From assembly GCA_002269645.1 (NCBI GenBank), contig NIVC01000133.1, positions 1-64,000 of the forward strand: a DNA stretch of 64,000 bases, in the 5' to 3' direction. Source of the DNA: Macrostomum lignano (taxonomy: Eukaryota). Shown here in pieces: positions 14,301 to 59,830 of the stretch. A program made the position numbers and the translations under genes. Numbering within the stretch: position 1 is the stretch's first letter; each line of letters starts with the position of its first letter. Under the pieces are notes generated by a model. The model ran no database searches and had not been told where the DNA came from. It worked only from the letters and a program-made list of their open reading frames with translations.

Positions 14301-14575
14301 TGGTCGGCTCCGCCAGGGAAGGAAATCAGCAACTCGAAGGCCTGGGCACCGGGCGAGTAATCGAGATTTTCCAAAGACAATTTAAGCCTGAAGAGCAGCA
14401 GTGTGATTTTTACCAATATTTTAAACGCTTGTTCAGCGCATGAAAAACTATATTTAAAGATACATTTTAACAGTTAGTCTCACCCAGCTGAAGAGTAGTT
14501 GGTCATTCGGCCGTAAATCACAATGCTGTGTCCATACCGTATTTGCACTGGGAGTCGCGCTCGGAATGGAATTAT
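8306..14575 (-). CDS. Four tandem C-terminal galectin-fold (Gal-bind_lectin-like) domains, seven exons
   Basis: Galectin-like start motifs: IIPFRARLPVQIRYGHSIVIYGRM, LELPLRERL, NPLTALPKQQPVGSQIRIWARL..CRISLRTGADPSSADFALLARV, LWLPYTNRLP..PGRLIRLG. Galectin-like end motifs: IHINGEYIMTYLMKLDARRVKSLYIEGDLMLEDFKI, FYVVLDSGHNASLRHRIDPDLVTHLHLAG, LVVNKRIVSSYRADISPKDARWIVITGNISLLNVEL. Assigned by eye against the recalled galectin strand pattern. Confidence 0.72.
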
Positions 14576-17500
14576 CTGTATAGTTCAAAAATATATATAT
14601 AGCTTCATGTCACCTGTAGAATATCACAGGTAAAGGAGCTTTCAACTTATTCGCCGGAATGCAGCCCAAAGTAAAGCTCCATACCGAACCGACTGTTATC
14701 GACAACTTGTCGGACTGGTTGAAAAAAAATTCGGAGACATTCCACCTAGATCTAGGTCACATCCTTGTTCTCCCTCGATTTCCTATTCTGAGATATTCCA
14801 TCTAGGTCACATCCTTGTTCTCCCTCGATTTCCTATTCCGAGACATTCGATCTAGGTCACATCATTGCTCTCCCTCGATTTCCTATCCCGAGACATTCCA
14901 TTTAGGTTACATCCTTCTTCTTCCTCGATTTCCTATCCCGAGATATCCCATTTAGGTTACATCCTTGCTATCCCTCGATTTCCTATCTAAAAGAACTCTT
15001 ACCGGCTTCAGAGTTGAGAATCCTTTGGCATTTTTTCGCCGCTCCAAATCTTCAATGGCAGATTCGTTCGTCAGCTGGAACTCCAGAGTGTCCCCATGGC
15101 TGCCGTCGCCGAATTGCAGAGAATTGCTGAGCTCTCTGTCTGAGCCGGCTCGAGGCCCGTCCCCGCTAGGGCTGTTAAACGCCTCGCTTTGCCAGTGGTC
15201 TCCAGAGGGCTTTTTCCAGTTGACTTGCCGCCTACTCAACCTTAACGATGCTGGCTCAGCTGAGAACTTCTTAGCCAGTCGCTGTTTGAACGAATCTTCG
15301 CTACAGCTGCTGCTGTCGTCGCTGCTGCTGCCGTCAGTTTCGCTGCTGCAACCGGAGGCCAGACGGTCACCTTTCACAAATCCGCTGGCGCCTTGCAAGT
15401 TATAGGAACTGTATCGAAATACTCCGAACTTGGCAGCGTCTTGAGCCCTGGATGGCTTCTGATTCGCTCCAGGCATCTTGGCTAGTGTCGAAATCATAAC
15501 ATCAGTGCCGTTGGACATTATGGCATGGTGGTCTGCTTCTTCGACATGCGTGTTTGGACCGATCGGCTCCGGACTGCGACCATCCCGTAATTTGCTCTGC
15601 TCGGTCCATTTGGAATTGAGCGTAGCGTTGGTCTGATTAGCGGCAATCTATGAAGGAGTTACAAGAAAATCGCTTTTAGAGGCATTGCTTTAAAGCTGGA
15701 GCATTAAAATTTCATGCAAAGAATTTTTTCCGACGATATTTTTCCCATTAGTTTGTCTCATCAACTAAATCTCATCTCATCATCTAAATAAAAATATCGT
15801 AGTATATTTCCTTCGTAAACCTCAGCGGGAAAATCTTGTTCACCCTTTGAAACTATTGCTTCTCAATATCTTCGAATATACTAAATCATTTACTATAGGC
15901 GCCCTTGCGAGGCACATTTAAGGTAACGCATTTTTTATTAGAGGCAAAGGGGTTGTGTGCACCCTGGCGCACTTTAAGCGACATCAACACACAACCGGCG
16001 AAAGGCATTACTGCCCATTCCGCCGACTCCCCTGAGCAGGCATACAAGCGCGGATACGTACGCAGGCACACACTCACACAGGAGTGTACAGCGGCCCTAA
16101 CTTTATTTTATCGCTAGGCATGTACACTTCACTGTGCCTTGGGGGGTTGGCTCTCAAGGCCGTTAATTGCACGAGCAGAGCCAAGCCGAGATTCCAATTT
16201 AGCCCCAAATTAATGTGACTGCACTTGGAATCGAGCCTGGGTCGCTGGCACACCAGAGCCTGCGCTAGACCGCTGGGCTACGCCCCCCCCCCCCAAAAGA
16301 GACGATGCATACTGAAACAAAAATGATTTAGTAGATTAAAAAAAGCTTACACTGCCGCCATCAAAGAAGTACGGAGGCTCGTCATTGTCCGCCTCGCTGT
16401 CCTCGTCCTCACTGGCAGACAGGCGACCCGGCTGCTGGACAACATCATCCAACTGGCCACGAGTGCCTGTGTCGGCGCCTTCTGCTGCAGAACTGGCAGA
16501 CTCGATTACTGACTGGAGCGATTCTCTGGATTCACACTCTTGGCGCACCAGTGTTGGGGTTCCATCGAGCACTTTTGGCAAACTGATTTCATGCGCAGTT
16601 GTAGCGGCACTTATCTCAATTGCGTTCAATTCAGGATCTGAAGAATTTTCTGCTTGCTCTTGTTTAAGCTCTGCTTGTTGAACCTCGGTTTGGACAAGTG
16701 CCTTATCATTCGAGAGTTTGCTATCGTTGCTTAGAGGTGAAGAATCCCGCAAATTTTCGTTGTTGGAACGTGGCGAATTCGATTCTTCTAAGCTGTACGA
16801 CTTGCGTGAAGGCTGGTTGTCGTAGTAGTGAGAGACAGTACTCGAGGGTGAAACGGTATCTACCACGCTACTGTTAGTATTTGAGTCAAACGGCTTATCC
16901 TCGCTGTGAGCATCTTTAAAGCACGTTTTTTCTTCTTCTGATTCAATGTGTTCTGGCTGAAAGCCTCCCTGAGTGACAGTGTGTACAGACAAACTGTGAT
17001 TTTGATCCAATGACGCGGTCTCTGACAGAGGGGAGGCTCCTTCAAATTCAGGACTGTTTTGACTGGCGTGCGATGCAGTTGATTTATCCGATTCTTCAGC
17101 TAGGTTCCTGTCGAGCAAGCCTTTGACTGACCTTTCAGTTTGAAAAGTCACGTTTTCGACACCTGCAGCTGCTGGGGTTCTATTTGAAATATCTGTCGAC
17201 GTGTTGTCTAGACAAGTGAAATCCAACTTACTCATCGGATCCATGCCTTCTTTTATAGTCGGCTTTGCATAACTATAAGATGGCACGCTAGTGTTAGGAT
17301 TATCATTGAACTCAAGGCAGCGTGTTATATCTATGGCTTCACTTGGAAAATTAATTTTGTTAGTGCCTTTTTCAAGATCACTTGAAGCTTTCTCTTGCCC
17401 TGAAGACGCTTCCTGCAATTCCATCGAAATCTGTTGGTCCTCGTACTCGATCCGGACCTCATCGACGTCCTGGTCGAGGTGCTTCACCAAGCTCTTTATG

Positions 17501-20500
17501 TCGTCGACTTCTGCTCCAATGGACTCATCGCGCTGCTCAGCATCAGTACCCTGCTGCAGCTTTCGAGCAAGCACGCTTTCCTCGGTCTCTTCAGCGAGAT
17601 CGGCTGACTGGCTTTCGTGACGAAGCTCTCGGATCGGAGGCTCCGGCAATTCCATCGAAACCTGTTGGTCCTCGTACTCGATCCGGACCTCATCGACGTC
17701 CTGGTCGAGGTGCATCACCAAGCTCTTTATGTCGTCGACTTCTGCTCCAATGGACTCATCGCGCTGCTCAGCATCAGTAACCTGCTGCAGCTTTCGAGCA
17801 AGCACGCTTTCCTCGTTCTCTTCAGCGAGATCGGCTGACTGGCTTTCGTGACGAAGCTCTCGGATTGAGGGCTCCAAAATTTCGATTGACAGTTGCTGAT
17901 CCTGTGTCGAAGCTTCTTTTGTTGCTGCACTGCTACTTCCGACTTGCTCCTGGTTGTCCTGTTCGCTACTTTTGGTTTGACTAACTGTATCTGGGTCTCT
18001 TGACATTGACGGCACTTGTGTTTCGTTAGTCTCGCTGTCATTTCTCTGTGCTAGTTGACTTGATTGCTTCCTACGGAAGCTCGCCTCGTTTTCCGCGTTT
18101 CCAGCTGTGTCCAAGTCGGAGACATTATACGATCCTCTGTGTCGCTTAAAAACACCCATAAACTTTCCGAACACGTTCTTTTTGTGCTTTGGTGGGTATG
18201 ATGACTCGAGTGGCATCGAGCTTTGAGAACCAGAGCTCTGACTTTTATCGTCGTGCGTTCCAGTCACACTTACACTGTGGGGTCTCGTCTGAGGTTTTTC
18301 TCTCTTTGCCGAGCTCTCACCAGATGTGTGTCGCAGCCTTACTTTTGATTCGATGGGCGGAAACTCTGCACTTCCCAAAGACAAGCGTTTTACTATTTTT
18401 GATGACTTTGGCTCAGCCAGATCTATCGACCTACTCTCGTTTCTTTCGTCGACGGGTGCGTCCCTAATATGATGCAGGAGATCGTCTGACTGCCAGGATC
18501 GATCGCTCTCATTGGAAATTTGACTATCGCGATCAAACGAGTGCCCGTAGCGGCGAGGCTCGTGGATGATGGGCTCCGGCAATTCCATCGAAATCTGTTG
18601 GTCCTCGTACTCGATCCGGACCTCATCGACGTCCTGGTCGAGGTGCTTCACCAAGCTCTTTATGTCGTCGAATTCTGCTCCAATGGACTCATCGCGCTGC
18701 TCAGCATCAGTAACCTGCTGCAGCTTTCGAGCAGGCACGCTTTCCTCGGTCTCTTCAGCGAGATCGGCTGACTGGCTTTGGTGACGAATCTCTCGGATCG
18801 GAGGCTCCGGCAATTCCATCGAAATCTGTTGGTCCTCGTACTCGATCCGGACCTCATCGACGTCCTGGTCGAGGTGCTTCACCAAGCTCTTTATGTCGTC
18901 GACTTCTGCTCCAATGGACTCATCGCGCTGCTCAGCATCAGTACCCTGCTGCAGCTTTCGAGCAAGCACGCTTTCCTCGGTCTCTTCAGCGAGATCGGCT
19001 GACTGGCTTTCGTGACGAAGCTCTCGGATCGGAGGCTCCGGCAATTCCATCGAAATCTGTTGGTCCTCGTACTCGATCCGGACCTCATCGACGTCCTGGT
19101 CGAGGTGCTTCACCAAGCTCTTTATGTCGTCGACTTCTGCTCCAATGGACTCATCGCGCTGCTCAGCATCAGTACCCTGCTGCAGCTTTCGAGCAAGCAC
19201 GCTTTCCTCGGTCTCTTCAGCGAGATCGGCTGACTGGCTTTCGTGACGAATCTCTCGGATCGGAGGCTCCGGCAATTCCATCGAAATCTGTTGGTCCAGG
19301 TACTCGATCCGGACCTCATCGACGTCCTGGTCGAGGTGCTTCACCAAGCTCTTTATGTCGTCGACTTCTGCTCCAATGGACTCATCGCGCTGCTCAGCAT
19401 CAGTACCCTGCTGCAGCTTTCGAGCAGGCACGCTTTCCTCGGTCTCTTCAGCGAGATCGGCTGACTGGCTTTGGTGACGAATCTCTCGGATCGGAGGCTC
19501 CGGCAATTCCATCGAAATCTGTTGGTCCTCGTACTCGATCCGGACCTCATCGACGTCCTGGTCGAGGTGCTTCACCAAGCTCTTTATGTCGTCGACTTCT
19601 GCTCCAATGGACTCATCGCGCTGCTCAGCATCAGTACCCTGCTGCAGCTTTCGAGCAAGCACGCTTTCCTCGGTCTCTTCAGCGAGATCGGCTGACTGGC
19701 TTTGGTGACGAATCTCTCGGATCGGAGGCTCCGGCAATTCCATCGAAATCTGTTGGTCCAGGTACTCGATCCGGACCTCATCGACGTCCTGGTCGAGGTG
19801 CTTCACCAAGCTCTTTATGTCGTCGACTTCTGCTCCAATGGACTCATCGCGCTGCTCAGCATCAGTACCCTGCTGCAGCTTTCGAGCAGGCACGCTCTCC
19901 TCGGTCTCTTCAGCGAGATCGGCTGACTGGCTTTCGTGACGAAGCTCTCGGATCTGAGGCTCCGGCAATTCCATCGAAATCTGTTGGTCCTCGTACTCGA
20001 TCCGGACCTCATCGACGTCCTGGTCGAGGTGCATCACCAATCTCTTTATGTCGTCGACTTCTGCTCCAATGGACTCATCGCGCTGCTCAGCATCAGTAAC
20101 CTGCTGCAGCTTTCGAGCAAGCACGCTTTCCTCGGTCTCTTCAGCGAGATCGGCTGACTGGCTTTCGTGACGAAGCTCTCGGATTGAGGGCTCCAAAATT
20201 TCGATTGACAGTTGCTGATCCTGTGTCGAAGCTTCTTTTGTTGCTGCACTGCTACTTCCGACTTGCTCCTGGTTTTCCTGTTCGCTACTTTTGGTTTGAC
20301 TAACTGTATCTGGGTCTCTTGACATTGACGGCACTTGTGTTTCGTTAGTCTCGCTTTCATTTCTCTGTGCTAGTTGACTTGATTGCTTCCTACGGAAGCT
20401 CGCCTCGTTTTCCGCGTTTCCAGCTGTGTCCAAGTCGGAGACATTATACGATCCTCTGTGTCGCTTAAAAACACCCATGAACTTTCCGAACACGTTCTTT

Positions 20501-23500
20501 TTGTGCTTTGGTGGGTATGATGACTCGAGTGGCATCGAGCTTTGAGAACCAGAGCTCTGACTTTTATCGTCGTGCGTTCCAGTCACACTTACACTGTGGG
20601 GTCTCGTCTGAGGTTTTTCTCTCTTTGCCGAGCTCTCACCAGATGTGTGTCGCAGCCTTACTTTTGATTCGATGGGCGGAAACTCTGCACTTCCCAAAGA
20701 CAAGCGTTTTACTATTTTTGATGACTTTGGCTCAGCCAGATCTATCGACCTACTCTCGTTTCTTTCGTCGACGGGTGCGTCCCTAATATGATGCAGGAGA
20801 TCGTCTGACTGCCAGGATTGATCGCTCTCCTTGGAAATTTGACTATCGCGATCAACCGAGTGCCCGTAGCGGCGAGGCTCGTGGATGATGGGCTCCGGCA
20901 ATTCCATCGAAATCTGTTGGTCCTCGTACTCGATCCGGACCTCATCGATGTCCTGGTCGAGGTGCTTCACCAAGCTCTTTATGTCGTCGACTTCTGCTCC
21001 AATGGACTCATCGCGCTGCTCAGCATCAGTAACCTGCTGCAGCTTTCGAGCAGGCACGCTTTCCTCGGTCTCTTCAGCGAGATCGGCTGACTGGCTTTGG
21101 TGACGAATCTCTCGGATCGGAGGCTCCGGCAATTCCATCGAAATCTGTTGGTCCTCGTACTCGATCCGGACCTCATCGACGTCCTGGTCGAGGTGCTTCA
21201 CCAAGCTCTTTATGTCGTCGACTTCTGCTCCAATGGACTCATCGCGCTGCTCAGCATCAGTAACCTGCTGCAGCTTTCGAGCAAGCACGCTTTCCTCGGT
21301 CTCTTCAGCGAGATCGGCTGACTGGCTTTCGTGACGAAGCTCTCGGATCGGAGGCTCCGGCAATTCCATCGAAATCTGTTGGTCCTCGTACTCGATCCGG
21401 ACCTCATCGACGTCCTGGTCGAGGTGCTTCACCAAGCTCTTTATGTCGTCGACTTCTGCTCCAATGGACTCATCGCGCTGCTCAGCATCAGTAACCTGCT
21501 GCAGCTTTCGAGCAGGCACGCTCTCCTCGGTCTCTTCAGCGAGATCGGCTGACTGGCTTTCGTGACGAAGCTCTCGGATCGGAGGCTCCGGCAATTCCAT
21601 CGAAATCTGTTGGTCCTCGTACTCGATCCGGACCTCATCGACGTCCTGGTCGAGGTGCATCACTAAGCTCTTCATGTCGTCGACTTCTGCTCCAATGGAC
21701 TCATCGCGCTGCTCAGCATCAGTAACCTGCTGCAGCTTTCGAGCAAGCACGCTTTCCTCGGTCTCTTCAGCGAGATCGGCTGACTGGCTTTGGTGACGAA
21801 TCTCTCGGATCGGAGGCTCCGGCAATTCCATCGAAATCTGTTGGTCCAGGTACTCGATCCGGACCTCATCGACGTCCTGGTCGAGGTGCTTCACCAAGCT
21901 CTTTATGTCGTCGACTTCTGCTCCAATGGACTCATCGCGCTGCTCAGCATCAGTACCCTGCTGCAGCTTTCGAGCAGGCACGCTCTCCTCGGTCTCTTCA
22001 GCGAGATCGGCTGACTGGCTTTCGTGACGAAGCTCTCGGATCGGAGGCTCCGGCAATTCCATCGAAATCTGTTGGTCCTCGTACTCGATCCGGACCTCAT
22101 CGACGTCCTGGTCGAGGTGCATCACCAAGCTCTTTATGTCGTCGACTTCTGCTCCAATGGACTCATCGCGCTGCTCAGCATCAGTAACCTGCTGCAGCTT
22201 TCGAGCAAGCACGCTTTCCTCGGTCTCTTCAGCGAGATCGGCTGACTGGCTTTGGTGACGAATCTCTCGGATCGGAGGCTCCGGCAATTCCATCGAAATC
22301 TGTTGGTCCTCGTACTCGATCCGGACCTCATCGACGTCCTGGTCGAGGTGCATTACCAAGCTCTTTATGTCGTCGACTTCTGCTCCAATGGACTCATCGC
22401 GCTGCTCAGCATCAGTAACCTGCTGCAGCTTTCGAGCAAGCACGCTTTCCTCGTTCTCTTCAGCGAGATCGGCTGACTGGCTTTCGTGACGAAGCTCTCG
22501 GATTGAGGGCTCCAAAATTTCGATTGACAGTTGCTGATCCTGTGTCGAAGCTTCTTTTGTTGCTGCACTGCTACTTCCGACTTGCTCCTGGTTGTCCTGT
22601 TCGCTACTTTTGGTTTGACTAACTGTATCTGGGTCTCTTGACATTGACGGCACTTGTGTTTCGTTAGTCTCGCTGTCATTTCTCTGTGCTAGTTGACTTG
22701 ATTGCTTCCTACGGAAGCTCGCCTCGTTTTCCGCGTTTCCAGCTGTGTCCAAGTCGGAGACATTATACGATCCTCTGTGTCGCTTAAAAACACCCATGAA
22801 CTTTCCGAACACGTTCTTTTTGTGCTTTGGTGGGTATGATGACTCGAGTGGCATCGAGCTTTGAGAACCAGAGCTCTGACTTTTATCGTCGTGCGTTCCA
22901 GTCACACTTACACTGTGGGGTCTCGTCTGAGGTTTTTCTCTCTTTGCCGAGCTCTCACCAGATGTGTGTCGCAGCCTTACTTTTGATTCGATGGGCGGAA
23001 ACTCTGCACTTCCCAAAGACAAGCGTTTTACTATTTTTGATGACTTTGGCTCAGCCAGATCTATCGACCTACTCTCGTTTCTTTCGTCGACGGGTGCGTC
23101 CCTAATATGATGCAGGAGATCGTCTGACTGCCAGGATTGATCGCTCTCCTTGGAAATTTGACTATCGCGATCAACCGAGTGCCCGTAGCGGCGAGGCTCG
23201 TGGATGATGGGCTCCGGCAATTCCATCGAAATCTGTTGGTCCTCGTACTCGATCCGGACCTCATCGATGTCCTGGTCGAGGTGCTTCACCAAGCTCTTTA
23301 TGTCGTCGACTTCTGCTCCAATGGACTCATCGCGCTGCTCAGCATCAGTACCCTGCTGCAGCTTTCGAGCAGGCACGCTTTCCTCGGTCTCTTCAGCGAG
23401 ATCGGCTGACTGGCTTTGGTGACGAATCTCTCGGATCGGAGGCTCCGGCAATTCCATCGAAATCTGTTGGTCCTCGTACTCGATCCGGACCTCATCGACG

Positions 23501-26500
23501 TCCTGGTCGAGGTGCTTCACCAAGCTCTTTATGTCGTCGACTTCTGCTCCAATGGACTCATCGCGCTGCTCAGCATCAGTACCCTGCTGCAGCTTTCGAG
23601 CAAGCACGCTTTCCTCGGTCTCTTCAGCGAGATCGGCTGACTGGCTTTCGTGACGAAGCTCTCGGATCGGAGGCTCCGGCAATTCCATCGAAACCTGTTG
23701 GTCCTCGTACTCGATCCGGACCTCATCGACGTCCTGGTCGAGGTGCATCACCAAGCTCTTTATGTCGTCGACTTCTGCTCCAATGGACTCATCGCGCTGC
23801 TCAGCATCAGTAACCTGCTGCAGCTTTCGAGCAAGCACGCTTTCCTCGTTCTCTTCAGCGAGATCGGCTGACTGGCTTTCGTGACGAAGCTCTCGGATTG
23901 AGGGCTCCAAAATTTCGATTGACAGTTGCTGATCCTGTGTCGAAGCTTCTTTTGTTGCTGCACTGCTACTTCCGACTTGCTCCTGGTTGTCCTGTTCGCT
24001 ACTTTTGGTTTGACTAACTGTATCTGGGTCTCTTGACATTGACGGCACTTGTGTTTCGTTAGTCTCGCTGTCATTTCTCTGTGCTAGTTGACTTGATTGC
24101 TTCCTACGGAAGCTCGCCTCGTTTTCCGCGTTTCCAGCTGTGTCCAAGTCGGAGACATTATACGATCCTCTGTGTCGCTTAAAAACACCCATAAACTTTC
24201 CGAACACGTTCTTTTTGTGCTTTGGTGGGTATGATGACTCGAGTGGCATCGAGCTTTGAGAACCAGAGCTCTGACTTTTATCGTCGTGCGTTCCAGTCAC
24301 ACTTACACTGTGGGGTCTCGTCTGAGGTTTTTCTCTCTTTGCCGAGCTCTCACCAGATGTGTGTCGCAGCCTTACTTTTGATTCGATGGGCGGAAACTCT
24401 GCACTTCCCAAAGACAAGCGTTTTACTATTTTTGATGACTTTGGCTCAGCCAGATCTATCGACCTACTCTCGTTTCTTTCGTCGACGGGTGCGTCCCTAA
24501 TATGATGCAGGAGATCGTCTGACTGCCAGGATCGATCGCTCTCATTGGAAATTTGACTATCGCGATCAAACGAGTGCCCGTAGCGGCGAGGCTCGTGGAT
24601 GATGGGCTCCGGCAATTCCATCGAAATCTGTTGGTCCTCGTACTCGATCCGGACCTCATCGACGTCCTGGTCGAGGTGCTTCACCAAGCTCTTTATGTCG
24701 TCGAATTCTGCTCCAATGGACTCATCGCGCTGCTCAGCATCAGTAACCTGCTGCAGCTTTCGAGCAAGCACGCTTTCCTCGGTCTCTTCAGCGAGATCGG
24801 CTGACTGGCTTTGTGACGAAGCTCTCGGATCGGAGGCTCCGGCAATTCCATCGAAATCTGTTGGTCCTCGTACTCGATCCGGACCTCATCGACGTCCTGG
24901 TCGAGGTGCTTCACCAAGCTCTTTATGTCGTCGACTTCTGCTCCAATGGACTCATCGCGCTGCTCAGCATCAGTACCCTGCTGCAGCTTTCGAGCAAGCA
25001 CGCTTTCCTCGGTCTCTTCAGCGAGATCGGCTGACTGGCTTTGGTGACGAATCTCTCGGATCGGAGGCTCCGGCAATTCCATCGAAATCTGTTGGTCCAG
25101 GTACTCGATCCGGACCTCATCGACGTCCTGGTCGAGGTGCTTCACCAAGCTCTTTATGTCGTCGACTTCTGCTCCAATGGACTCATCGCGCTGCTCAGCA
25201 TCAGTACCCTGCTGCAGCTTTCGAGCAGGCACGCTCTCCTCGGTCTCTTCAGCGAGATCGGCTGACTGGCTTTCGTGACGAAGCTCTCGGATCGGAGGCT
25301 CCGGCAATTCCATCGAAATCTGTTGGTCCTCGTACTCGATCCGGACCTCATCGACGTCCTGGTCGAGGTGCATCACTAAGCTCTTCATGTCGTCGACTTC
25401 TGCTCCAATGGACTCATCGCGCTGCTCAGCATCAGTACCCTGCTGCAGCTTTCGAGCAAGCACGCTTTCCTCGTTCTCTTCAGCGAGATCGGCTGACTGG
25501 CTTTCGTGACGAAGCTCTCGGATCGGAGGCTCCGGCAATTCCATCGAAATCTGTTGGTCCTCGTACTCGATCCGGACCTCATCGACGTCCTGGTCGAGGT
25601 GCTTCACCAAGCTCTTTATGTCGTCGACTTCTGCTCCAATGGACTCATCGCGCTGCTCAGCATCAGTACCCTGCTGCAGCTTTCGAGCAAGCACGCTTTC
25701 CTCGGTCTCTTCAGCGAGATCGGCTGACTGGCTTTCGTGACGAAGCTCTCGGATCGGAGGCTCCGGCAATTCCATCGAAATCTGTTGGTCCTCGTACTCG
25801 ATCCGGACCTCATCGACGTCCTGGTCGAGGTGCATCACCAATCTCTTTATGTCGTCGACTTCTGCTCCAATGGACTCATCGCGCTGCTCAGCATCAGTAA
25901 CCTGCTGCAGCTTTCGAGCAAGCACGCTTTCCTCGGTCTCTTCAGCGAGATCGGCTGACTGGCTTTCGTGACGAAGCTCTCGGATTGAGGGCTCCAAAAT
26001 TTCGATTGACAGTTGCTGATCCTGTGTCGAAGCTTCTTTTGTTGCTGCACTGCTACTTCCGACTTGCTCCTGGTTGTCCTGTTCGCTACTTTTGGTTTGA
26101 CTAACTGTATCTGGGTCTCTTGACATTGACGGCACTTGTGTTTCGTTAGTCTCGCTTTCATTTCTCTGTGCTAGTTGACTTGATTGCTTCCTACGGAAGC
26201 TCGCCTCGTTTTCCGCGTTTCCAGCTGTGTCCAAGTCGGAGACATTATACGATCCTCTGTGTCGCTTAAAAACACCATGAACTTTCCGAACACGTTCTTT
26301 TTGTGCTTTGGTGGGTATGATGACTCGAGTGGCATCGAGCTTTGAGAACCAGAGCTCTGACTTTTATCGTCGTGCGTTCCAGTCACACTTACACTGTGGG
26401 GTCTCGTCTGAGGTTTTTCTCTCTTTGCCGAGCTCTCACCAGATGTGTGTCGCAGCCTTACTTTTGATTCGATGGGCGGAAACTCTGCACTTCCCAAAGA

Positions 26501-35500: not shown

Positions 35501-38500
35501 GATCGGAGGCTCCGGCAATTCCATCGAAATCTGTTGGTCCTCGTACTCGATCCGGACCTCATCGACGTCCTGGTCGAGGTGCTTCACCAAGCTCTTTATG
35601 TCGTCGACTTCTGCTCCAATGGACTCATCGCGCTGCTCAGCATCAGTACCCTGCTGCAGCTTTCGAGCAAGCACGCTTTCCTCGGTCTCTTCAGCGAGAT
35701 CGGCTGACTGGCTTTCGTGACGAAGCTCTCGATCGGAGGCTCCGGCAATTCCATCGAAACCTGTTGGTCCTCGTACTCGATCCGGACCTCATCGACGTCC
35801 TGGTCGAGGTGCATCACCAAGCTCTTTATGTCGTCGACTTCTGCTCCAATGGACTCATCGCGCTGCTCAGCATCAGTAACCTGCTGCAGCTTTCGAGCAA
35901 GCACGCTTTCCTCGTTCTCTTCAGCGAGATCGGCTGACTGGCTTTCGTGACGAAGCTCTCGGATTGAGGGCTCCAAAATTTCGATTGACAGTTGCTGATC
36001 CTGTGTCGAAGCTTCTTTTGTTGCTGCACTGCTACTTCCGACTTGCTCCTGGTTGTCCTGTTCGCTACTTTTGGTTTGACTAACTGTATCTGGGTCTCTT
36101 GACATTGACGGCACTTGTGTTTCGTTAGTCTCGCTGTCATTTCTCTGTGCTAGTTGACTTGATTGCTTCCTACGGAAGCTCGCCTCGTTTTCCGCGTTTC
36201 CAGCTGTGTCCAAGTCGGAGACATTATACGATCCTCTGTGTCGCTTAAAAACACCCATGAACTTTCCGAACACGTTCTTTTTGTGCTTTGGTGGGTATGA
36301 TGACTCGAGTGGCATCGAGCTTTGAGAACCAGAGCTCTGACTTTTATCGTCGTGCGTTCCAGTCACACTTACACTGTGGGGTCTCGTCTGAGGTTTTTCT
36401 CTCTTTGCCGAGCTCTCACCAGATGTGTGTCGCAGCCTTACTTTTGATTCGATGGGCGGAAACTCTGCACTTCCCAAAGACAAGCGTTTTACTATTTTTG
36501 ATGACTTTGGCTCAGCCAGATCTATCGACCTACTCTCGTTTCTTTCGTCGACGGGTGCGTCCCTAATATGATGCAGGAGATCGTCTGACTGCCAGGATCG
36601 ATCGCTCTCCTTGGAAATTTGACTATCGCGATCAAACGAGTGCCCGTAGCGGCGAGGCTCGTGGATGATGGGCTCCGGCAATTCCATCGAAATCTGTTGG
36701 TCCTCGTATTCGATCCGGACCTCATCGATGTCCTGGTCGAGGTGCTTCACCAAGCTCTTTATGTCGTCGACTTCTGCTCCAATGGACTCATCGCGCTGCT
36801 CAGCATCAGTACCCTGCTGCAGCTTTCGAGCAGGCACGCTCTCCTCGGTCTCTTCAGCGAGATCGGCTGACTGGCTTTCGTGACGAAGCTCTCGGATCGG
36901 AGGCTCCGGCAATTCCATCGAAATCTGTTGGTCCTCGTACTCGATCCGGACCTCATCGACGTCCTGGTCGAGGTGCATCACTAAGCTCTTCATGTCGTCG
37001 ACTTCTGCTCCAATGGACTCATCGCGCTGCTCAGCATCAGTAACCTGCTGCAGCTTTCGAGCAAGCACGCTTTCCTCGGTCTCTTCAGCGAGATCGGCTG
37101 ACTGGCTTTCGTGACGAAGCTCTCGGATCTGAGGCTCCGGCAATTCCATCGAAACCTGTTGGTCCTCGTACTCGATCCGGACCTCATCGACGTCCTGGTC
37201 GAGGTGCATCACCAAGCTCTTTATGTCGTCGACTTCTGCTCCAATGGACTCATCGCGCTGCTCAGCATCAGTAACCTGCTGCAGCTTTCGAGCAAGCACG
37301 CTTTCCTCGGTCTCTTCAGCGAGATCGGCTGACTGGCTTTCGTGACGAAGCTCTCGGATCGGAGGCTCCGGCAATTCCATCGAAATCTGTTGGTCCTCGT
37401 ACTCGATCCGGACCTCATCGACGTCCTGGTCGAGGTGCATCACTAAGCTCTTTATGTCGTCGACTTCTGCTCCAATGGACTCATCGCGCTGCTCAGCATC
37501 AGTACCCTGCTGCAGCTTTCGAGCAAGCACGCTTTCCTCGGTCTCTTCAGCGAGATCGGCTGACTGGCTTTCGTGACGAAGCTCTCGGATCGGAGGCTCC
37601 GGCAATTCCATCGAAACCTGTTGGTCCTCGTACTCGATCCGGACTTCATCGACGTCCTGGTCGAGGTGCATCACCAAGCTCTTTATGTCGTCGACTTCTG
37701 CTCCAATGGACTCATCGCGCTGCTCAGCATCAGTAACCTGCTGCAGCTTTCGAGCAAGCACGCTTTCCTCGGTCTCTTCAGCGAGATCGGCTGACTGGCT
37801 TTCGTGACGAAGCTCTCGGATCGGAGGCTCCGGCAATTCCATCGAAATCTGTTGGTCCTCGTACTCGATCCGGACCTCATCGACGTCCTGGTCGAGGTGC
37901 ATCACTAAGCTCTTTATGTCGTCGACTTCTGCTCCAATGGACTCATCGCGCTGCTCAGCATCAGTACCCTGCTGCAGCTTTCGAGCAAGCACGCTTTCCT
38001 CGGTCTCTTCAGCGAGATCGGCTGACTGGCTTTCGTGACGAAGCTCTCGGATCGGAGGCTCCGGCAATTCCATCGAAACCTGTTGGTCCTCGTACTCGAT
38101 CCGGACCTCATCGACGTCCTGGTCGAGGTGCATCACCAAGCTCTTTATGTCGTCGACTTCTGCTCCAATGGACTCATCGCGCTGCTCAGCATCAGTAACC
38201 TGCTGCAGCTTTCGAGCAAGCACGCTTTCCTCGTTCTCTTCAGCGAGATCGGCTGACTGGCTTTCGTGACGAAGCTCTCGGATTGAGGGCTCCAAAATTT
38301 CGATTGACAGTTGCTGATCCTGTGTCGAAGCTTCTTTTGTTGCTGCACTGCTACTTCCGACTTGCTCCTGGTTGTCCTGTTCGCTACTTTTGGTTTGACT
38401 AACTGTATCTGGGTCTCTTGACATTGACGGCACTTGTGTTTCGTTAGTCTCGCTGTCATTTCTCTGTGCTAGTTGACTTGATTGCTTCCTACGGAAGCTC

Positions 38501-41500
38501 GCCTCGTTTTCCGCGTTTCCAGCTGTGTCCAAGTCGGAGACATTATACGATCCTCTGTGTCGCTTAAAAACACCCATGAACTTTCCGAACACGTTCTTTT
38601 TGTGCTTTGGTGGGTATGATGACTCGAGTGGCATCAAGCTTTGAGAACCAGAGCTCTGACTTTTATCGTCGTGCGTTCCAGTCACACTTACACTGTGGGG
38701 TCTCGTCTGAGGTTTTTCTCTCTTTGCCGAGCTCTCACCAGATGTGTGTCGCAGCCTTACTTTTGATTCGATGGGCGGAAACTCTGCACTTCCCAAAGAC
38801 AAGCGTTTTACTATTTTTGATGACTTTGGCTCAGCCAGATCTATCGACCTACTCTCGTTTCTTTCGTCGACGGGTGCGTCCCTAATATGATGCAGGAGAT
38901 CGTCTGACTGCCAGGATTGATCGCTCTCCTTGGAAATTTGACTATCGCGATCAACCGAGTGCCCGTAGCGGCGAGGCTCGTGGATGATGGGCTCCGGCAA
39001 TTCCATCGAAATCTGTTGGTCCTCGTACTCGATCCGGACCTCATCGATGTCCTGGTCGAGGTGCATCACCAAGCTCTTTATGTCGTCGACTTCTGCTCCA
39101 ATGGACTCATCGCGCTGCTCAGCATCAGTACCCTGCTGCAGCTTTCGAGCAGGCACGCTCTCCTCGGTCTCTTCAGCGAGATCGGCTGACTGGCTTTGGT
39201 GACGAAGCTCTCGGATCGGAGGCTCCGGCAATTCCATCGAAATCTGTTGGTCCTCGTACTCGATCCGGACCTCATCGACGTCCTGGTCGAGGTGCATCAC
39301 TAAGCTCTTCATGTCGTCGACTTCTGCTCCAATGGACTCATCGCGCTGCTCAGCATCAGTAACCTGCTGCAGCTTTCGAGCAAGCACGCTTTCCTCGGTC
39401 TCTTCAGCGAGATCGGCTGACTGGCTTTCGTGACGAAGCTCTCGGATCTGAGGCTCCGGCAATTCCATCGAAACCTGTTGGTCCTCGTACTCGATCCGGA
39501 CCTCATCGACGTCCTGGTCGAGGTGCATCACCAAGCTCTTTATGTCGTCGACTTCTGCTCCAATGGACTCATCGCGCTGCTCAGCATCAGTAACCTGCTG
39601 CAGCTTTCGAGCAAGCACGCTTTCCTCGGTCTCTTCAGCGAGATCGGCTGACTGGCTTTCGTGACGAAGCTCTCGGATCGGAGGCTCCGGCAATTCCATC
39701 GAAATCTGTTGGTCCTCGTACTCGATCCGGACCTCATCGACGTCCTGGTCGAGGTGCTTCACCAAGCTCTTTATGTCGTCGACTTCTGCTCCAATGGACT
39801 CATCGCGCTGCTCAGCATCAGTACCCTGCTGCAGCTTTCGAGCAAGCACGCTTTCCTCGGTCTCTTCAGCGAGATCGGCTGACTGGCTTTCGTGACGAAG
39901 CTCTCGGATCGGAGGCTCCGGCAATTCCATCGAAACCTGTTGGTCCTCGTACTCGATCCGGACCTCATCGACGTCCTGGTCGAGGTGCATCACCAAGCTC
40001 TTTATGTCGTCGACTTCTGCTCCAATGGACTCATCGCGCTGCTCAGCATCAGTAACCTGCTGCAGCTTTCGAGCAAGCACGCTTTCCTCGTTCTCTTCAG
40101 CGAGATCGGCTGACTGGCTTTCGTGACGAAGCTCTCGGATTGAGGGCTCCAAAATTTCGATTGACAGTTGCTGATCCTGTGTCGAAGCTTCTTTTGTTGC
40201 TGCACTGCTACTTCCGACTTGCTCCTGGTTGTCCTGTTCGCTACTTTTGGTTTGACTAACTGTATCTGGGTCTCTTGACATTGACGGCACTTGTGTTTCG
40301 TTAGTCTCGCTGTCATTTCTCTGTGCTAGTTGACTTGATTGCTTCCTACGGAAGCTCGCCTCGTTTTCCGCGTTTCCAGCTGTGTCCAAGTCGGAGACAT
40401 TATACGATCCTCTGTGTCGCTTAAAAACACCCATGAACTTTCCGAACACGTTCTTTTTGTGCTTTGGTGGGTATGATGACTCGAGTGGCATCGAGCTTTG
40501 AGAACCAGAGCTCTGACTTTTATCGTCGTGCGTTCCAGTCACACTTACACTGTGGGGTCTCGTCTGAGGTTTTTCTCTCTTTGCCGAGCTCTCACCAGAT
40601 GTGTGTCGCAGCCTTACTTTTGATTCGATGGGCGGAAACTCTGCACTTCCCAAAGACAAGCGTTTTACTATTTTTGATGACTTTGGCTCAGCCAGATCTA
40701 TCGACCTACTCTCGTTTCTTTCGTCGACGGGTGCGTCCCTAATATGATGCAGGAGATCGTCTGACTGCCAGGATCGATCGCTCTCCTTGGAAATTTGACT
40801 ATCGCGATCAAACGAGTGCCCGTAGCGGCGAGGCTCGTGGATGATGGGCTCCGCAATTCCATCGAAATCTGTTGGTCCTCGTATTCGATCCGGACCTCAT
40901 CGATGTCCTGGTCGAGGTGCTTCACCAAGCTCTTTATGTCGTCGACTTCTGCTCCAATGGACTCATCGCGCTGCTCAGCATCAGTACCCTGCTGCAGCTT
41001 TCGAGCAGGCACGCTTTCCTCGGTCTCTTCAGCGAGATCGGCTGACTGGCTTTGGTGACGAATCTCTCGGATCGGAGGCTCCGGCAATTCCATCGAAATC
41101 TGTTGGTCCTCGTACTCGATCCGGACCTCATCGACGTCCTGGTCGAGGTGCATCACTAAGCTCTTCATGTCGTCGACTTCTGCTCCAATGGACTCATCGC
41201 GCTGCTCAGCATCAGTACCCTGCTGCAGCTTTCGAGCAAGCACGCTTTCCTCGGTCTCTTCAGCGAGATCGGCTGACTGGCTTTCGTGACGTAGCTCTCG
41301 GATCGAAGGCTCCGAAATTTCGATTGACAGTTGCTGATCCTGTGTCGAAGCTTCTTTTGTTGCTGCACTGCTACTTCCGACTTGCTCCTGGTTGTCCTGT
41401 TCGCTACTTTTGGTTTGACTAACTGTATCTGGGTCTCTTGACATTGACGGCACTTGTGTTTCGTTAGTCTCGCTGTCATTTCTCTGTGCTAGTTGACTTG

Positions 41501-44500
41501 ATTGCTTCCTACGGAAGCTCGCCTCGTTTTCCGCGTTTCCAGCTGTGTCCAAGTCGGAGACATTATACGATCCTCTGTGTCGCTTAAAAACACCCAGGAA
41601 CTTTCCGAACACGTTCTTTTTGTGCTTTGGTGGGTATGATGACTCGAGTGGCATCGAGCTTTGAGAACCAGAGCTCTGACTTTTATCGTCGTGCGTTCCA
41701 GTCACACTTACACTGTGGGGTCTCGTCTGAGGTTTTTCTCTCTTTGCCGAGCTCTCACCAGATGTGTGTCGCAGCCTTACTTTTGATTCGATGGGCGGAA
41801 ACTCTGCACTTCCCAAAGACAAGCGTTTTACTATTTTTGATGACTTTGGCTCAGCCAGATCTATCGACCTACTCTCGTTTCTTTCGTCGACGGGTGCGTC
41901 CCTAATATGATGCAGGAGATCGTCTGACTGCCAGGATCGATCGCTCTCCTTGGAAATTTGACTATCGCGATCAAACGAGTGCCCGTAGCGACGAGGCTCG
42001 TGGATGATAGGCTCCGGCAATTCCATCGAAACCTGTTGGTCCTCGTACTCGATCCGGACCTCATCGACGTCCTGGTCGAGGTGCTTTACCAAGTTCTTTA
42101 TGTCGTCGACTTCTGCTCCAATGGACTCATCGCGCTGCGCAGCATCAGTACCCTGCTGCAGCTTTCGAGCAGGCACGCTTTCCTCGGTCTCTTCAGCGAG
42201 ATCGGCTGACTGGCTTTCGTGACGAAGCTCTCGGATCGGAGGCTCCGGCAATTCCATCGAAACCTGTTGGTCCTCGTACTCGATCCGGACCTCATCGACG
42301 TCCTGGTCGAGGTGCATCACCAAGCTCTTTATGTCGTCGACTTCTGCTCCAATGGACTCATCGCGCTGCTCAGCATCAGTGCCTTGCTGCTGTTCTCGAA
42401 TAGACGTGGTGTCTTCGGTGGGATTCAATAGCGTTGTCGATGGCAATCCACTGGATTTTTCGTCTTTGTTTTGGGGTTGTTTTTGCTGTAATTGATGAAG
42501 TTTTGAGAATTTCATCATAGATTTGATCGATGATAGGGTTCTGCTGTGGCTGAGATGGCTTTTATGTTTTCGCCTAAGTTTTGGGGATTTACTGCGTTGC
42601 TGCTCATATTTAAATAATCGTATTTCTTCTTTGCTTGGACGCTCGTCAACTGTCACTGCGAGACATTCATAGGTGCCGATTTGGATACTCATAGTTTCGT
42701 TTTTTCTTTGAAAATTCTTGATGAGGGATGTTTCTACACCAGTTTCAATCTTGTTGTCGTCGTCATATGCTTTGGATACGATTTCTCTGCCAGTTCGCAA
42801 CATGACTGTCTCAATTCCTTCCTTTGCTGGATCGTCTAATTCCAACCAGGCAGACTCAATGACGTCTTTACCTACGTTGTTTGCTGACGTTTTCCTGACG
42901 TTCTCCTGAGCTTTCGCGTTGGCTTCATTAACGTTAACTGTTTGATGCGTGTCTCGTTTGTACAAAGCTGTTGAAAATTTCGGCTCAATGAAAGTTTTCG
43001 AATCTACCGGCTCAAATTCTACCACGCTGCTGAAGTTTGAGCTTGGTTTGATGTAGGCCGTGTCTGCGTTCCTAAGTTGACATCGTCGTAGCCTTGCATT
43101 CTCGGCATCAAGATCCGATTTCGGCATCGTTTGAACACTGCCATGCGAGATTTCGTGGTTCAGTCTATCGTCATTTTTGAGTTCGCATTCGCTTTCTTCG
43201 CTGAAAATGGGGATCGGCTTCCAGATTGAGTTCTCAACTCTAGGCAGTGAGAGGCGGAGTCGCTTGACGTGACTCGGCGTGCCGGGCTGCCTTGCCGAAT
43301 GTACTGTAATTTGGCGCATAGAATTGTCTATAAGTTAAGCGTGAAGATGATTAAAATTGATAACAGCCTGGCAGAAGCTCACCGAGCTGGACATTTAAAT
43401 ACGGGTTCTCCGGTTCTGTGGCAACTTTTGGCTCTTCGGAGTCGCAAATCTCCAGCTCGGTGAAGTCGGCCTCTCCGCCCAGTATAACGGTGCAGATTGC
43501 CGAGTAGTTCCCGTTGTGGCTGAGCTCCGCCAGGTGCTTTTCTTGTAGGCTTATCTAAAAAATTAATCACATTTCTATGGTGCGCTCTCAGACTACTTGC
43601 TGATTCAAATGATCGTCTCTTTGATTAGAATATTTTGAAGCCAGATTTATCGTATCAATATTGCAATTGCAACGTATTGTAAGACTTTATTCGGCGAAGT
43701 ACATCAGGTACTTGTATCTGCTCCGGTTTATTCAGAGAATCTACAGAGGTCCATTCAGTAGTTTCTAGTGGTCCTTGATGTGATTGTTCACCCATTGTCC
43801 ACAACAGTTAGTCTGCATTCACAATCAAACGGTTCCTGTCCAGTTTAGGACTTTTCCCCGAACGGGACCGGGTGAAGCGTTCGAAACTGTTAGGTTTACA
43901 TCTGGGAATGCCACAATCTTTTTTTTCGAACGTGCCAACCTGCTGAAGCAGAACCAGACCGAAATCGCTTGATTGTGAAAGCAGCATTACTCTTGATGAA
44001 ATTTCAATCTCCCCTCAGGTTTGAGTACTCAACACATAGCCAGAAAATTATTTCATGACTGTTCCGTCAATGGTTCAATTAATTCTACGACTATTTATAC
44101 CTGTCCCCAATCGCTGGTAGTGACAATTTCCTGTGGTGAAATCGCAAAAAATCAACCAAACAGCTAAACATTGGTTGTTTGAGGCTCAAACCAATTGGGT
44201 AAGACTTGCGGTAAAAATAAGTTTGTGTTCTTGATTTAGTGTGATTCGGACGCTACTCAGTAGTTACAGTATTACGCTCGTATTACAGGTTAAGATAGAC
44301 ATCAAACGCATTTTTCTGTCTTTTCTGGCGTAAATAGATGTCAAAATAATTTTGAAAAACATATCATATAGATAGCTATGAAATCATTTTGGCTAACTCA
44401 CATCGTAGCCGAGCGGTTGCACGGCAACTTTGATGACAAATGAGTACGGCGTTACAATCACTTCGCTGAGTCTTCCGCGCCTGTCTGTCTGCTTGCCTTT

Positions 44501-59609: not shown

Positions 59610-59830
59610 CTGCCGCTTAAAATTGGAGGCCACTGTTAATGGTGGCCATTTGATTTCCTAGTTTTGCTCCGATTTTACAGTGTTGTAATCTAATACGAGT
59701 ATGATCTCGTGCTCTGTAGTACCTGTGCTGCCGATAATGAGATTTAGCAACTGCTTCTGAATTGGTTGGGATTTCGATGTACACTAGGATCTAGATCTTC
59801 AGTGTGCGCCACATCTTCAGGCTAAACAGC

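What the first reader, a model, noticed from the sequence alone, without database searches (positions are those of the whole stretch)
16351..43327. A single ~27 kb coding exon with a two-level repeat grammar
Seen: from N to C, the number of 77-aa units between the 14 cassettes is ~1.7, 2, 5, 7, 5, 7, 2, 1, 5, 5, 6, 3, 7, 7, 2. Units differ only at a few recurring positions (L/I, E/Q, T/N, L/P, V/G, K/M, E/L, I/V, I/M) in shuffled combinations, and no substitution creates a stop. The corrected length (26,977+10 = 2+3x8,995) fits the flanking exon phases exactly. Inference: ongoing unequal crossover or gene conversion under selection for an open frame, so alleles probably differ in length by kilobases.
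Basis: partly seen in the sequence, partly recalled or inferred. Interest (0 to 1): 0.75.

Follow-up and report, generated by a model that had tools for sequence, protein, structure and literature searches.

The report
Giant repeat exon, flatworm galectin-domain gene
This is a real, roughly 27 kb repeat-built coding exon of an uncharacterised galectin-domain gene of the flatworm Macrostomum lignano; it is a well-understood kind of fast-evolving repeat array, and its ten reading-frame breaks are most likely sequencing errors.

Summary
On the minus strand, 43327..16351 holds 14 cassettes (net insert 234 aa) and 65 units of 231 nt (77 aa). The splice sites and the arithmetic (26,977+10) also hold.

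The raw sequence is not one ORF. It has 11 open pieces separated by ten 1-nt deletions, all in CC/GG/GGG runs. Some recur at the same motif positions in an independent copy, which points to long-read consensus error.

The window is Macrostomum lignano. Gene models (A0A1I8HL23, A0A1I8J927) join the exon to downstream exons that encode divergent galectin-like domains. A second copy (Mlig_3_7 contig NIVC01000183.1, RNA-based CDS BOX15_Mlig005900g3) has the same unit and cassette in a different arrangement.

- Cassettes are 99.5-99.8% identical within an array and 97.7% between arrays, with 9 fixed differences.
- The edge cassette keeps states of the other copy.
- 56 of 105 pairs of common variant sites show all four combinations.

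Together these indicate concerted evolution by in-register unequal exchange. There is also a third repeat level, a 4.2 kb super-repeat.

Selection for the open frame is only weakly shown. Allelic length variation and the exact array length were not testable. This is a new member of a known kind, of moderate interest.

The parts
43383..43554 (-). Candidate upstream exon (172 nt, 57 codons + 1 base), inferred only
   Evidence: Stop-free frame, acceptor tgtgattaattttttag|ATA at 43554, donor G|GTGAGC after 43383. It ends in phase 1, so G+AC makes a GAC codon with the first two bases of the giant exon. No in-frame ATG, no Pfam hit, no transcript evidence.
43328..43382 (-). Putative 55-nt intron before the giant exon
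   Evidence: GTGAGC...TTATAG; inferred.
16351..43327 (-). Giant exon, 26,977 nt as assembled (26,987 nt if ten 1-nt deletions are consensus errors; about 8,995 codons)
   Evidence: The donor at 16351 is the one used by model P0002.
42400..43327 (-). Unique N-terminal part of the exon (about 309 codons, basic, pI about 9; in-frame ATG at 43319)
   Evidence: No homologue found.
17411..42399 (-). Repeat array: 65 units of 231 nt (77 aa, pI 4.2) and 14 cassettes. Each cassette is inserted near the end of a unit; unit plus cassette is 933 nt (311 aa).
31337..41314 (-). Third repeat level: a super-repeat of about 4.18 kb [cassette+5 units+cassette+7 units], about 2.4 copies
   Evidence: 41314-35508 matches 37139-31337 at lag 4175, 99.59% identity, 16 mismatches, 8 gaps. 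Unit-type strings DEFGH/DIJIFGK recur as DEFGL/DIJIFGH.
29680..30402 (-). Reference cassette (one of 14; the others are listed in the observation check). Ser/Thr-rich, near-neutral, with six R-x-x-S or K-R-x-S sites.
40853..40853 (-). Frame break 1 of 10, a 1-nt deletion in a CC run. The other nine are near 35731, 35023, 34809, 34555, 32391, 31638, 28513, 26276 and 24812.
   Evidence: All ten shorten a CC, GG or GGG run. Cassette position 6 and unit position 216 are also deleted in the independent copy L001.
16351..17410 (-). Unique C-terminal part of the exon (353 codons, acidic, Ser-rich)
   Evidence: 100% identical to P0002. 94.7% nt identity to L001 without indels, dN/dS 0.42.
15411..15647 (-). 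Next exon (phase 0 start); the intron 16350-15648 is 703 nt
   Evidence: tblastn of P0002/P0003.
11836..15221 (-). Further downstream exons encoding galectin-like domains. Approximate tblastn limits: 15221/15200-14988, 14575/14341-14171, 13960-13514, 12874-12749, 12423/12396-11836.
   Evidence: Pfam Gal-bind_lectin scores 26-33.8 bits against a cut-off of 22.1. Galectin-8 matches at E=0.002-0.004.
8099..11398 (-). Last exons according to model P0003 (11398-11183 and 8428-8099), separated by an intron
8656..11167 (.). 20-nt minisatellite (125 copies) lying in that intron

Best explanation
The region is one very large internal coding exon (minus strand, 43327..16351) of an uncharacterised Macrostomum lignano gene. 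The C-terminal exons of that gene encode divergent galectin-like domains.

The exon encodes roughly 9,000 residues:
- a basic unique head;
- an array of about 8,300 residues (about 0.94 MDa, net charge about -1000, no Cys);
- an acidic unique tail.

The array is built from a 77-aa acidic unit. A single-sequence AF2 model gives one helix of about 50 residues plus a Pro-containing linker per unit. A 234-aa Ser/Thr-rich cassette is inserted near the end of 14 of the units.

The array is organised on three levels: unit, unit-run plus cassette, and a 4.2 kb super-repeat. It evolves by in-register unequal crossing-over and gene conversion. Every period is a multiple of 3, so these exchanges keep the frame automatically. 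They homogenise each genomic copy (concerted evolution) and reshuffle variants and copy numbers.

The ten frame breaks are most likely 1-nt deletion errors of a long-read consensus in a repeat that short reads cannot polish, so the real gene is probably intact.

Shown: array anatomy, species, linkage to galectin-domain exons in gene models, the concerted-evolution signature, and transcription of the sister copy.

Inferred: the frame breaks are errors, the upstream exon, protein structure and function, and allelic length variation.
For: - Anatomy and counts.
- Coding: only one frame is open in all four distinct sequence classes, about 980 independent codons. The splice sites are in compatible phases.
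- Gene models: P0002 (A0A1I8HL23, 100% identical) uses the donor at 16351 and continues into six exons. P0003 (A0A1I8J927, 'Galectin domain-containing protein') adds three more.
- Galectin domain: Pfam galectin hits are above the cut-off, and paralogues score 69-99 bits.
- Transcription: P0001 (BOX15_Mlig005900g3) is a CDS from the RNA-seq-based Mlig_3_7 annotation. It is collinear with 1,590 nt (one cassette plus units) of the sister array (method in PMC5730564).
- Concerted evolution: cassette identity is 99.5% and 99.8% within arrays against 97.7% between them, with 9 fixed differences and no shared polymorphism. Unit variants are array-specific. The edge cassette keeps 6 of 16 states of the other copy against 0-2 for interior cassettes. 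56 of 105 site pairs show all four gametes. There is a 4.2 kb super-repeat. L001 carries a cassette truncated in frame at a shared 'CAGTCAG.CGATCTC' motif. The unit counts differ between the two copies.
- Frame breaks as errors: 14 of 14 indels (10 here, 4 in L001) are 1-nt deletions in CC/GG(G) runs. There are no insertions, no longer indels and no nonsense changes. Three recur at the same motif position in independent repeats or copies. The public assemblies are PacBio CLR + Canu + Pilon.
- Constraint: the unique tail shows dN/dS 0.42 and no indel in 590 nt at 5.3% divergence.
Against: - No reads were available, so the ten deletions could be real, and the array length or order could be mis-assembled. 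The 4.2 kb copies are 99.6% identical, and the array is probably longer than most reads used for such an assembly (my own knowledge; read lengths were not checked).
- There is no sign of amino-acid constraint inside the array. Cassette dN/dS is about 1.2, and 7 of 29 unit variants are synonymous, about the neutral share.
- 'No stop' is weak evidence (P about 0.10).
- Transcript evidence is indirect: it comes from the sister copy and covers 1.6 kb only.
- The 5' end of the gene is unresolved, and no database protein covers the N-terminal region.
- The galectin assignment for this copy is marginal (26-34 bits). The canonical Trp is replaced in the one domain that aligns to galectin-8.
- AF2 of the C-terminus failed (pLDDT 35), and the unit model is single-sequence with pTM 0.22.
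Confidence: 0.75

Rival explanations
1. The array is correctly sequenced, and this copy is a decaying duplicate (pseudogene). Its ten frameshifts are real. An intact copy elsewhere in the partly duplicated M. lignano genome does the work.
For: There are ten frame breaks in 27 kb. Substitution patterns inside the array look neutral. At least three copies of the gene exist: the window (which matches P0002), P0003 at about 98%, and L001 at about 95%. The DV1 genome has extensive duplicated blocks.
Against: All 14 indels in two independent copies are 1-nt deletions in short G/C runs, with recurrence at identical motif positions. Real indels would include insertions and other lengths. There is no nonsense substitution. 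The unique tail is under constraint (dN/dS 0.42) and free of indels. The sister copy with the same kind of breaks is transcribed.
Confidence: 0.1
2. The repeat family is real, but the assembled array is partly an assembly artefact. Its length, the number of 4.2 kb super-repeat copies or the order of blocks may be wrong, or it may be a chimera of the near-identical genomic copies.
For: A 5.8 kb stretch is 99.6% identical at a 4.2 kb offset. The array is 25 kb of copies 97-100% identical to the reference unit or cassette. The published assemblies of this species come from noisy CLR reads and are described as hard to assemble and redundant.
Against: The super-repeat copies differ by 16 substitutions, and the blocks carry distinct variant strings that allow them to be placed. 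The array variants are internally coherent and distinct from L001, with 9 fixed cassette differences, which argues against a chimera of copies.
Confidence: 0.25
3. The array is a non-coding satellite (intronic or intergenic) that merely happens to be open in one frame.
For: Tandem repeats inherit the openness of their unit. One antisense frame is also open across units. The species is very rich in tandem repeats.
Against: The same frame is open through unit, cassette and both unique flanks, about 980 distinct codons, and the antisense frame closes in the cassette. The splice phases fit on both sides. An RNA-based CDS covers the sister array. The tail has dN/dS 0.42.
Confidence: 0.03

Closest known systems
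Hierarchical tandem-repeat giant exons evolving in concert: Chironomus Balbiani-ring genes, spidroin 'ensemble' repeats, mucin VNTR exons, nebulin/titin super-repeats (comparison from established knowledge)
   Same: One very long exon is made of head-to-tail coding repeats whose period is a multiple of 3. It has higher-order repeat levels and homogenisation within a locus. The terminal repeats are divergent. Copy numbers change by unequal exchange.
   Different: The unit (77 aa, acidic, probably helical) and the 234-aa Ser-rich cassette have no detectable relatives outside M. lignano. No signal peptide or secretory domains were seen in the resolved part. The C-terminus carries galectin-like domains.
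Macrostomum lignano adhesive proteins Mlig-ap1 / Mlig-ap2 (PMC6410801)
   Same: Same species. Both are very large proteins (5,407 and 14,794 aa) with huge repetitive cores that short-read transcriptomes cannot assemble.
   Different: Mlig-ap2 has 21 repeats of 255 aa and 25 of 221 aa, plus vWD, TIL, LDL-receptor and TSP1 domains. Mlig-ap1 is Lys/Arg-rich. Here the repeats are 77 and 234 aa and strongly acidic, and the only recognisable domains are galectin-like.
Chimera-type and tandem-repeat galectins (galectin-3; galectin-4/-8; fish multi-domain lgals4-like proteins)
   Same: A non-lectin repetitive N-terminal region is followed by C-terminal galectin-fold domains. Pfam PF00337 matches above the cut-off, and there are significant hits to fish lgals4-like proteins (E 1.7e-21) and to galectin-8.
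   Different: The non-lectin region is about 9,000 aa, against roughly 100-150 aa in galectin-3 (established knowledge, not checked here). There are several divergent galectin-like domains. The canonical Trp of the sugar site is replaced in the domain that can be aligned, so lectin activity is doubtful.
M. lignano paralogues Mlig013397 / Mlig025793 (P0004, P0005, P0011; 'Galectin domain-containing protein')
   Same: About 34% identity over the C-terminal region. The architecture is the same: a low-complexity, probably disordered N-terminal part followed by galectin domains.
   Different: The paralogues are 825-1,637 aa and lack the 77-aa/234-aa array. Their galectin domains are much closer to the Pfam model (69-99 bits).

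Membership tests
Concertedly evolving coding tandem-repeat array (mucin/spidroin/Balbiani-ring type) | Head-to-tail repeats within one reading frame, with a period that is a multiple of 3 | tested here: met
   231 nt unit, 933 nt unit+cassette and about 4,176 nt super-repeat, all in one frame apart from ten 1-nt deletions.
Concertedly evolving coding tandem-repeat array (mucin/spidroin/Balbiani-ring type) | Repeats are more alike within a locus than between paralogous loci, with locus-specific fixed variants | tested here: met
   Cassettes are 99.5% and 99.8% identical within arrays against 97.7% between them. There are 9 fixed differences and no shared polymorphisms. The edge cassette is intermediate.
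Concertedly evolving coding tandem-repeat array (mucin/spidroin/Balbiani-ring type) | Repeat-number (length) polymorphism between alleles or individuals | not testable with these tools
   No reads or second haplotype of the same locus were available. Only paralogous copies could be compared, and they differ in arrangement.
Galectin family (Pfam PF00337) | Galectin beta-sandwich domain recognised by the family profile | tested here: met
   P0002 C-terminal part scores 26 bits (22.7 for the whole model) and the P0003 model 33.8 bits, against a gathering score of 22.1. Paralogues score 69-99 bits. Exhaustive HMMER hits fish lgals4-like proteins at E 1.7e-21. The AF2 model failed (pLDDT 35), so the fold was not confirmed structurally.
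Galectin family (Pfam PF00337) | Canonical carbohydrate-binding residues (His-Asn-Arg ... Asn ... Trp-x-Glu-x-Arg) | tested here: inconclusive
   In the only domain that aligns to galectin-8, 'NEKWGREE' aligns to 'NGQQSDEA': the Asn is kept, and the Trp and Arg are lost. The other domains were not alignable with confidence.
SCAR/WAVE (the UniProt name of model A0A1I8HL23 is 'Protein SCAR') | N-terminal WAVE homology domain and C-terminal WH2/VCA module | tested here: not met
   Pfam scans of P0002 and of the exon's unique parts found neither. The sister models are named galectin domain-containing. The name looks like an automatic mis-annotation.
Mlig-ap2-type flatworm adhesive protein | 255-aa/221-aa repeats flanked by vWD, TIL, LDL-receptor and TSP1 domains | tested here: not met
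   Repeat lengths and composition differ, and none of these domains was found.
Decaying pseudogene | A mix of nonsense changes and indels of both signs and various lengths | tested here: not met
   There are only 1-nt deletions in G/C runs (14 of 14 in two copies) and no nonsense changes. Whether the deletions are real could not be tested.

The most novel reading that the evidence does not exclude
The gene encodes a polyanionic protein of about 1 MDa (net charge about -1000) tethered to galectin-like domains. It could be the still-unidentified negatively charged 'releasing' substance of the flatworm duo-gland adhesive system. The acidic array would compete off the Lys/Arg-rich cohesive protein Mlig-ap1, and the galectin-like domains would dock on the Gal-beta(1-3)-GalNAc-bearing Mlig-ap2. 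As of 2022 the literature describes the release factor only as an unknown negatively charged substance (PMC9229212; PMC6410801). Nothing here shows where the gene is expressed. No signal peptide was seen in the resolved part, and the sugar-binding Trp is lost in the one domain that could be aligned. This is therefore speculation that the data merely do not exclude.
Probability: 0.03. Interest if true: 0.8.

Novelty: new member of a known kind. Interest (0 to 1): 0.35.

Why it matters
The finding documents a protein of about 9,000 or more residues that the protein collections searched represent only as fragments. One of those fragments carries a probably wrong name ('Protein SCAR').

It is a clean example of three-level repeat organisation and concerted evolution. 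At least three diverging copies exist in one genome, which is useful for studying how coding arrays expand after genome duplication.

It also shows concretely how uncorrected 1-nt deletions in long-read consensus break giant repetitive genes into pseudo-ORFs. For flatworm biology it flags an unusually large polyanionic protein with galectin-like domains as a candidate for in situ hybridisation and RNAi. It does not reveal a new mechanism.

Tried and rejected
- Exact look-ups of the neighbouring RBR/IBR ORF and of P0002 in the assembly index found nothing. The source assembly of the window is therefore unknown.
- Word-indexed homology searches with unit+cassette, with the unique N- and C-terminal parts, and with the downstream exons each returned one M. 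lignano protein: the sister-copy CDS P0001, or model P0002 of this locus. Only the exhaustive HMMER search found paralogues and fish galectins.
- No database protein covers the N-terminal unique region, so the 5' end of the gene stays unresolved.
- A codon-usage scan and Pfam scans of upstream open segments were uninformative.
- The weak Pfam hits of the repeat (SPO1_gp41, CopG and others) come from summing many short repeat matches. None has a significant single stretch, and I rejected them. The weak UPA_2 hit (E 0.22) was superseded by the galectin assignment.
- Identity with the adhesive proteins Mlig-ap1/ap2 was rejected on repeat length, charge and domains.
- SCAR/WAVE membership was rejected.
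- AF2 of the C-terminal 418 aa without an alignment gave pLDDT 35 and was not used, so no fold search was run.
- No tRNA and no Rfam family was found in the window, although there is a tRNA-like stretch in the intron near 16260-16290.
- An ungapped lag scan for long repeats failed because of the indels. It was replaced by gapped self-BLAST.
- A search for 'Mlig005900' in the literature found nothing.

Full report
**1. What is in the sequence**

Tandem Repeats Finder reports a 231-nt period across 17411..41314. The region is compositionally uniform, with GC 0.51-0.54 and a strong negative AT skew. I tiled the minus strand with one reference unit and one reference cassette.

- There are 14 cassettes, 723 nt as aligned and 98.5-100% identical to the reference. 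resolves 65 units.
- Each cassette follows a unit truncated at position 210 and ends with the last 29 nt of a unit. Unit plus cassette is 933 nt (311 aa), so the net insert is 234 aa.
- The unit counts between cassettes are about 1.8, 2, 5, 7, 5, 7, 2, 1, 5, 5, 6, 3, 7, 7, 2.
- 29 of 231 unit columns vary.

**2. The reading frame**

The raw sequence is not one ORF. It consists of eleven stop-free pieces whose frames step 0>2>1>0>2>1>0>2>1>0>2.

- Aligning every repeat to the consensus shows exactly ten 1-nt deletions and no other indels.
- Each deletion shortens a CC, GG or GGG run.
- With ten bases restored the exon is 26,987 nt, which is 2 + 3 x 8,995. It starts in phase 1 and ends in phase 0.
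- The coding call does not depend on the repeats. The same sense frame is stop-free in the unit (77 codons), the cassette (241), the unique head (309) and the unique tail (353).
- Four of the five other frames carry 3-36 stops in each class. The fifth, one antisense frame, is open across units but has 6-14 stops in the cassette and both unique ends.

**3. Species and gene**

The unit+cassette query hit one protein, 'hypothetical protein BOX15_Mlig005900g3, partial [Macrostomum lignano]' (P0001, 94% identity). It lies on Mlig_3_7 contig NIVC01000183.1 (locus L001).

The unique parts of the exon hit UniProt A0A1I8HL23 (P0002) at 100% identity, so the window is M. lignano.

- P0002 starts in the last unit and uses the donor at 16351. 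It continues at 15647 in phase 0 through five more exons, down to 11836.
- An exhaustive HMMER search with the C-terminal region found A0A1I8J927 (P0003; 98-99% identical, so a third genomic copy). Its model adds exons at 11398-11183 and 8428-8099.
- The 2.5 kb 20-nt minisatellite at 8656-11167 therefore lies in an intron.
- The same search found the M. lignano paralogues Mlig013397 and Mlig025793, and fish lgals4-like multi-galectin proteins.
- Pfam Gal-bind_lectin is matched above its cut-off: 26 and 33.8 bits against 22.1. The paralogues match strongly, at 69-99 bits.
- The canonical Trp of the sugar site is replaced in the one domain that aligns to galectin-8.
- The UniProt name 'Protein SCAR' has no support, since no WH2 or WAVE homology domain was found.
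- The gene is not Mlig-ap1 or Mlig-ap2.

Upstream, a 172-nt open segment (43554-43383) has a good acceptor and a GTGAGC donor. It is inferred only. An in-frame ATG at 43319, 8 nt after the acceptor, leaves a trans-spliced start possible.

**4. Are the frame breaks real?**

L001 has the same kind of defect: four breaks, all 1-nt deletions of a C in a CC run. Two of them fall at exactly the same motif positions as in the window, cassette position 6 and unit position 216. Within the window, unit position 1 is hit twice, in units of different type.

Fourteen of fourteen indels are thus 1-nt deletions in short G/C runs, with positional recurrence, no insertions, no longer indels and no nonsense changes. 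Context-specific consensus error is expected to leave this pattern. Gene decay is not.

The published assemblies of this species are PacBio CLR assembled with Canu and polished with Pilon (PMC5730564). Short-read polishing is unreliable in multi-copy sequence. Without reads this remains an inference, with confidence of about 0.85 that most of the ten are errors.

**5. How the array evolves**

L001 carries the same unit and cassette in a different arrangement. Its unit runs are 2, 2, 4, 4, 9, 7, 4, 17, 4 and 5, and one cassette is truncated.

- Cassettes are 99.5% (window) and 99.8% (L001) identical within an array and 97.7% between arrays. There are 9 fixed differences and no shared polymorphism.
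- Unit variants are likewise array-specific: about 20 common polymorphic sites in the window, 3 in L001, and one shared.
- The first cassette of the window array keeps 6 of the 16 states that distinguish the L001 consensus. Interior cassettes keep 0-2. The first two units are also the most divergent. This is the classical edge effect of unequal exchange.
- Within 231 nt, 56 of 105 pairs of common variant sites show all four combinations.
- Variants are also position-dependent. The unit after a cassette usually carries T11N. The unit before it usually carries the synonymous P70 variant, and often E1Q or V51I.
- A third level exists. The stretch 41314-35508 recurs at 37139-31337 (lag 4175; 99.59% identity, 16 mismatches). 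This is a super-repeat [cassette+5 units+cassette+7 units] in about 2.4 copies.
- In L001 one cassette was cut down to its first 96 nt by an in-frame exchange between 'CAGTCAG.CGATCTC' in the cassette and the same motif in a unit.
- The repeats are less diverged between copies (2.2%; pS 0.019) than the unique tail (5.3%; pS 0.098). This hints at exchange between copies, but the counts are small.

**6. Selection**

All periods are multiples of 3, so in-register exchange preserves the frame without selection.

- Direct evidence for selection on the frame is modest. About 5% of random substitutions would create a stop, so about 2.3 stops are expected among about 47 variable sites (P of none about 0.10). 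Adding L001 gives about 3.4 expected (P about 0.035).
- Amino-acid constraint is not detectable in the repeats. Cassette dN/dS is about 1.2, and 7 of 29 unit variants are synonymous.
- Constraint is detectable in the unique tail: dN/dS 0.42, with 12 synonymous against 19 non-synonymous differences and no indel in 590 nt.

**7. The protein**

- The array encodes about 8,300 aa, about 0.94 MDa, with net charge about -1000 and no cysteine.
- A single-sequence AF2 model of three units gives one helix of about 50 residues per unit (pLDDT 70-90) and a low-confidence linker of about 25 residues around ELPEPPIRELRH, with no compact fold (pTM 0.22). I take this only as a hint of a chain of acidic helices.
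- The cassette is Ser/Thr-rich and has six basophilic-kinase-type R-x-x-S or K-R-x-S sites.
- No signal peptide is evident in the resolved part, by inspection only, and the true N-terminus is unknown. Function is therefore inferred only loosely: a very long polyanionic spacer or scaffold carrying galectin-like modules.

**8. Limits**

- No reads, no transcripts of this copy and no second haplotype were available.
- The exact length and block order of the array, the reality of the ten deletions, the 5' end of the gene and allelic length variation all remain open.
- The array is probably longer than most reads used for such an assembly, so the super-repeat copy number is the least secure feature.

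**9. Verdict**

Its interpretation is largely right (a coding exon evolving by unequal exchange), but it overstates the evidence for selection on the frame and cannot yet claim allelic length variation.

The feature is a new member of a well-known kind: a hierarchical coding tandem array evolving in concert. It sits in an uncharacterised, lineage-specific galectin-domain gene that exists in at least three copies in the M. lignano genome. Interest is moderate.

Noticed in passing
window 8656-11167 (and 8497-8649): A 20-nt minisatellite, ATCAACTATCGGACAGGGAA x125 (89% matches), sits next to a different 20-nt repeat x7.7. According to model P0003 both lie in an intron near the 3' end of the same gene.
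   Followed up: partly
window 3080-4834 (+): An intact single-exon ORF of 584 aa has IBR/RING-between-RING domains (Pfam IBR, E 5e-15). It is a neighbouring E3-ligase-like gene. No exact match exists in the gene-position index.
   Followed up: partly
window 55993-56454, 57177-57880, 59830-60245: Three separate minisatellites with periods of 37, 35 and 34 nt share the core CCCAGATCCTCAGTT. Each is open in several frames. They lie near a PAS-like ORF at 55281-55583 (+) (Pfam PAS_2, E 0.012). They appear to be a dispersed family of related short tandem arrays.
   Followed up: no
window 62037-63043: A 29-nt tandem repeat x34.7 (96% matches) lies beside an ORF with a weak ribosomal protein S18 match (61527-61985, minus strand, E 0.005).
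   Followed up: no
window 45922-46216: A perfect 147-nt tandem duplication (100% identity) in the AT-rich region upstream of the gene.
   Followed up: no
window ~16260-16295 (minus strand, in the intron after the giant exon): A run of 11 G is followed by GCGTAGCCCAGCGGTCTAGCGCAG, which looks like the 5' half of a tRNA. ARAGORN and Rfam call nothing there. It may be a tRNA-derived SINE fragment.
   Followed up: partly
L001 8703-8799: In the sister copy one cassette is reduced to its first 96 nt. The cause is an in-frame exchange at the motif CAGTCAG.CGATCTC (QS[A/D]DL), which is shared by the cassette and the start of the unit. This suggests the start of the cassette is itself a diverged unit.
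   Followed up: yes
window 12439-12654 and 14750-14987: A 64-nt repeat (x3.4) and a 50-nt repeat (x4.8) fall among the introns and exon edges of the galectin-domain part of the gene. The 64-nt array is open on the minus strand and abuts the exon that starts near 12423.
   Followed up: no
UniProt A0A1I8HL23 (P0002): The public name 'Protein SCAR' for the model of this locus is not supported by any domain. Sister models are named 'Galectin domain-containing protein'. This is a likely automatic mis-annotation.
   Followed up: yes
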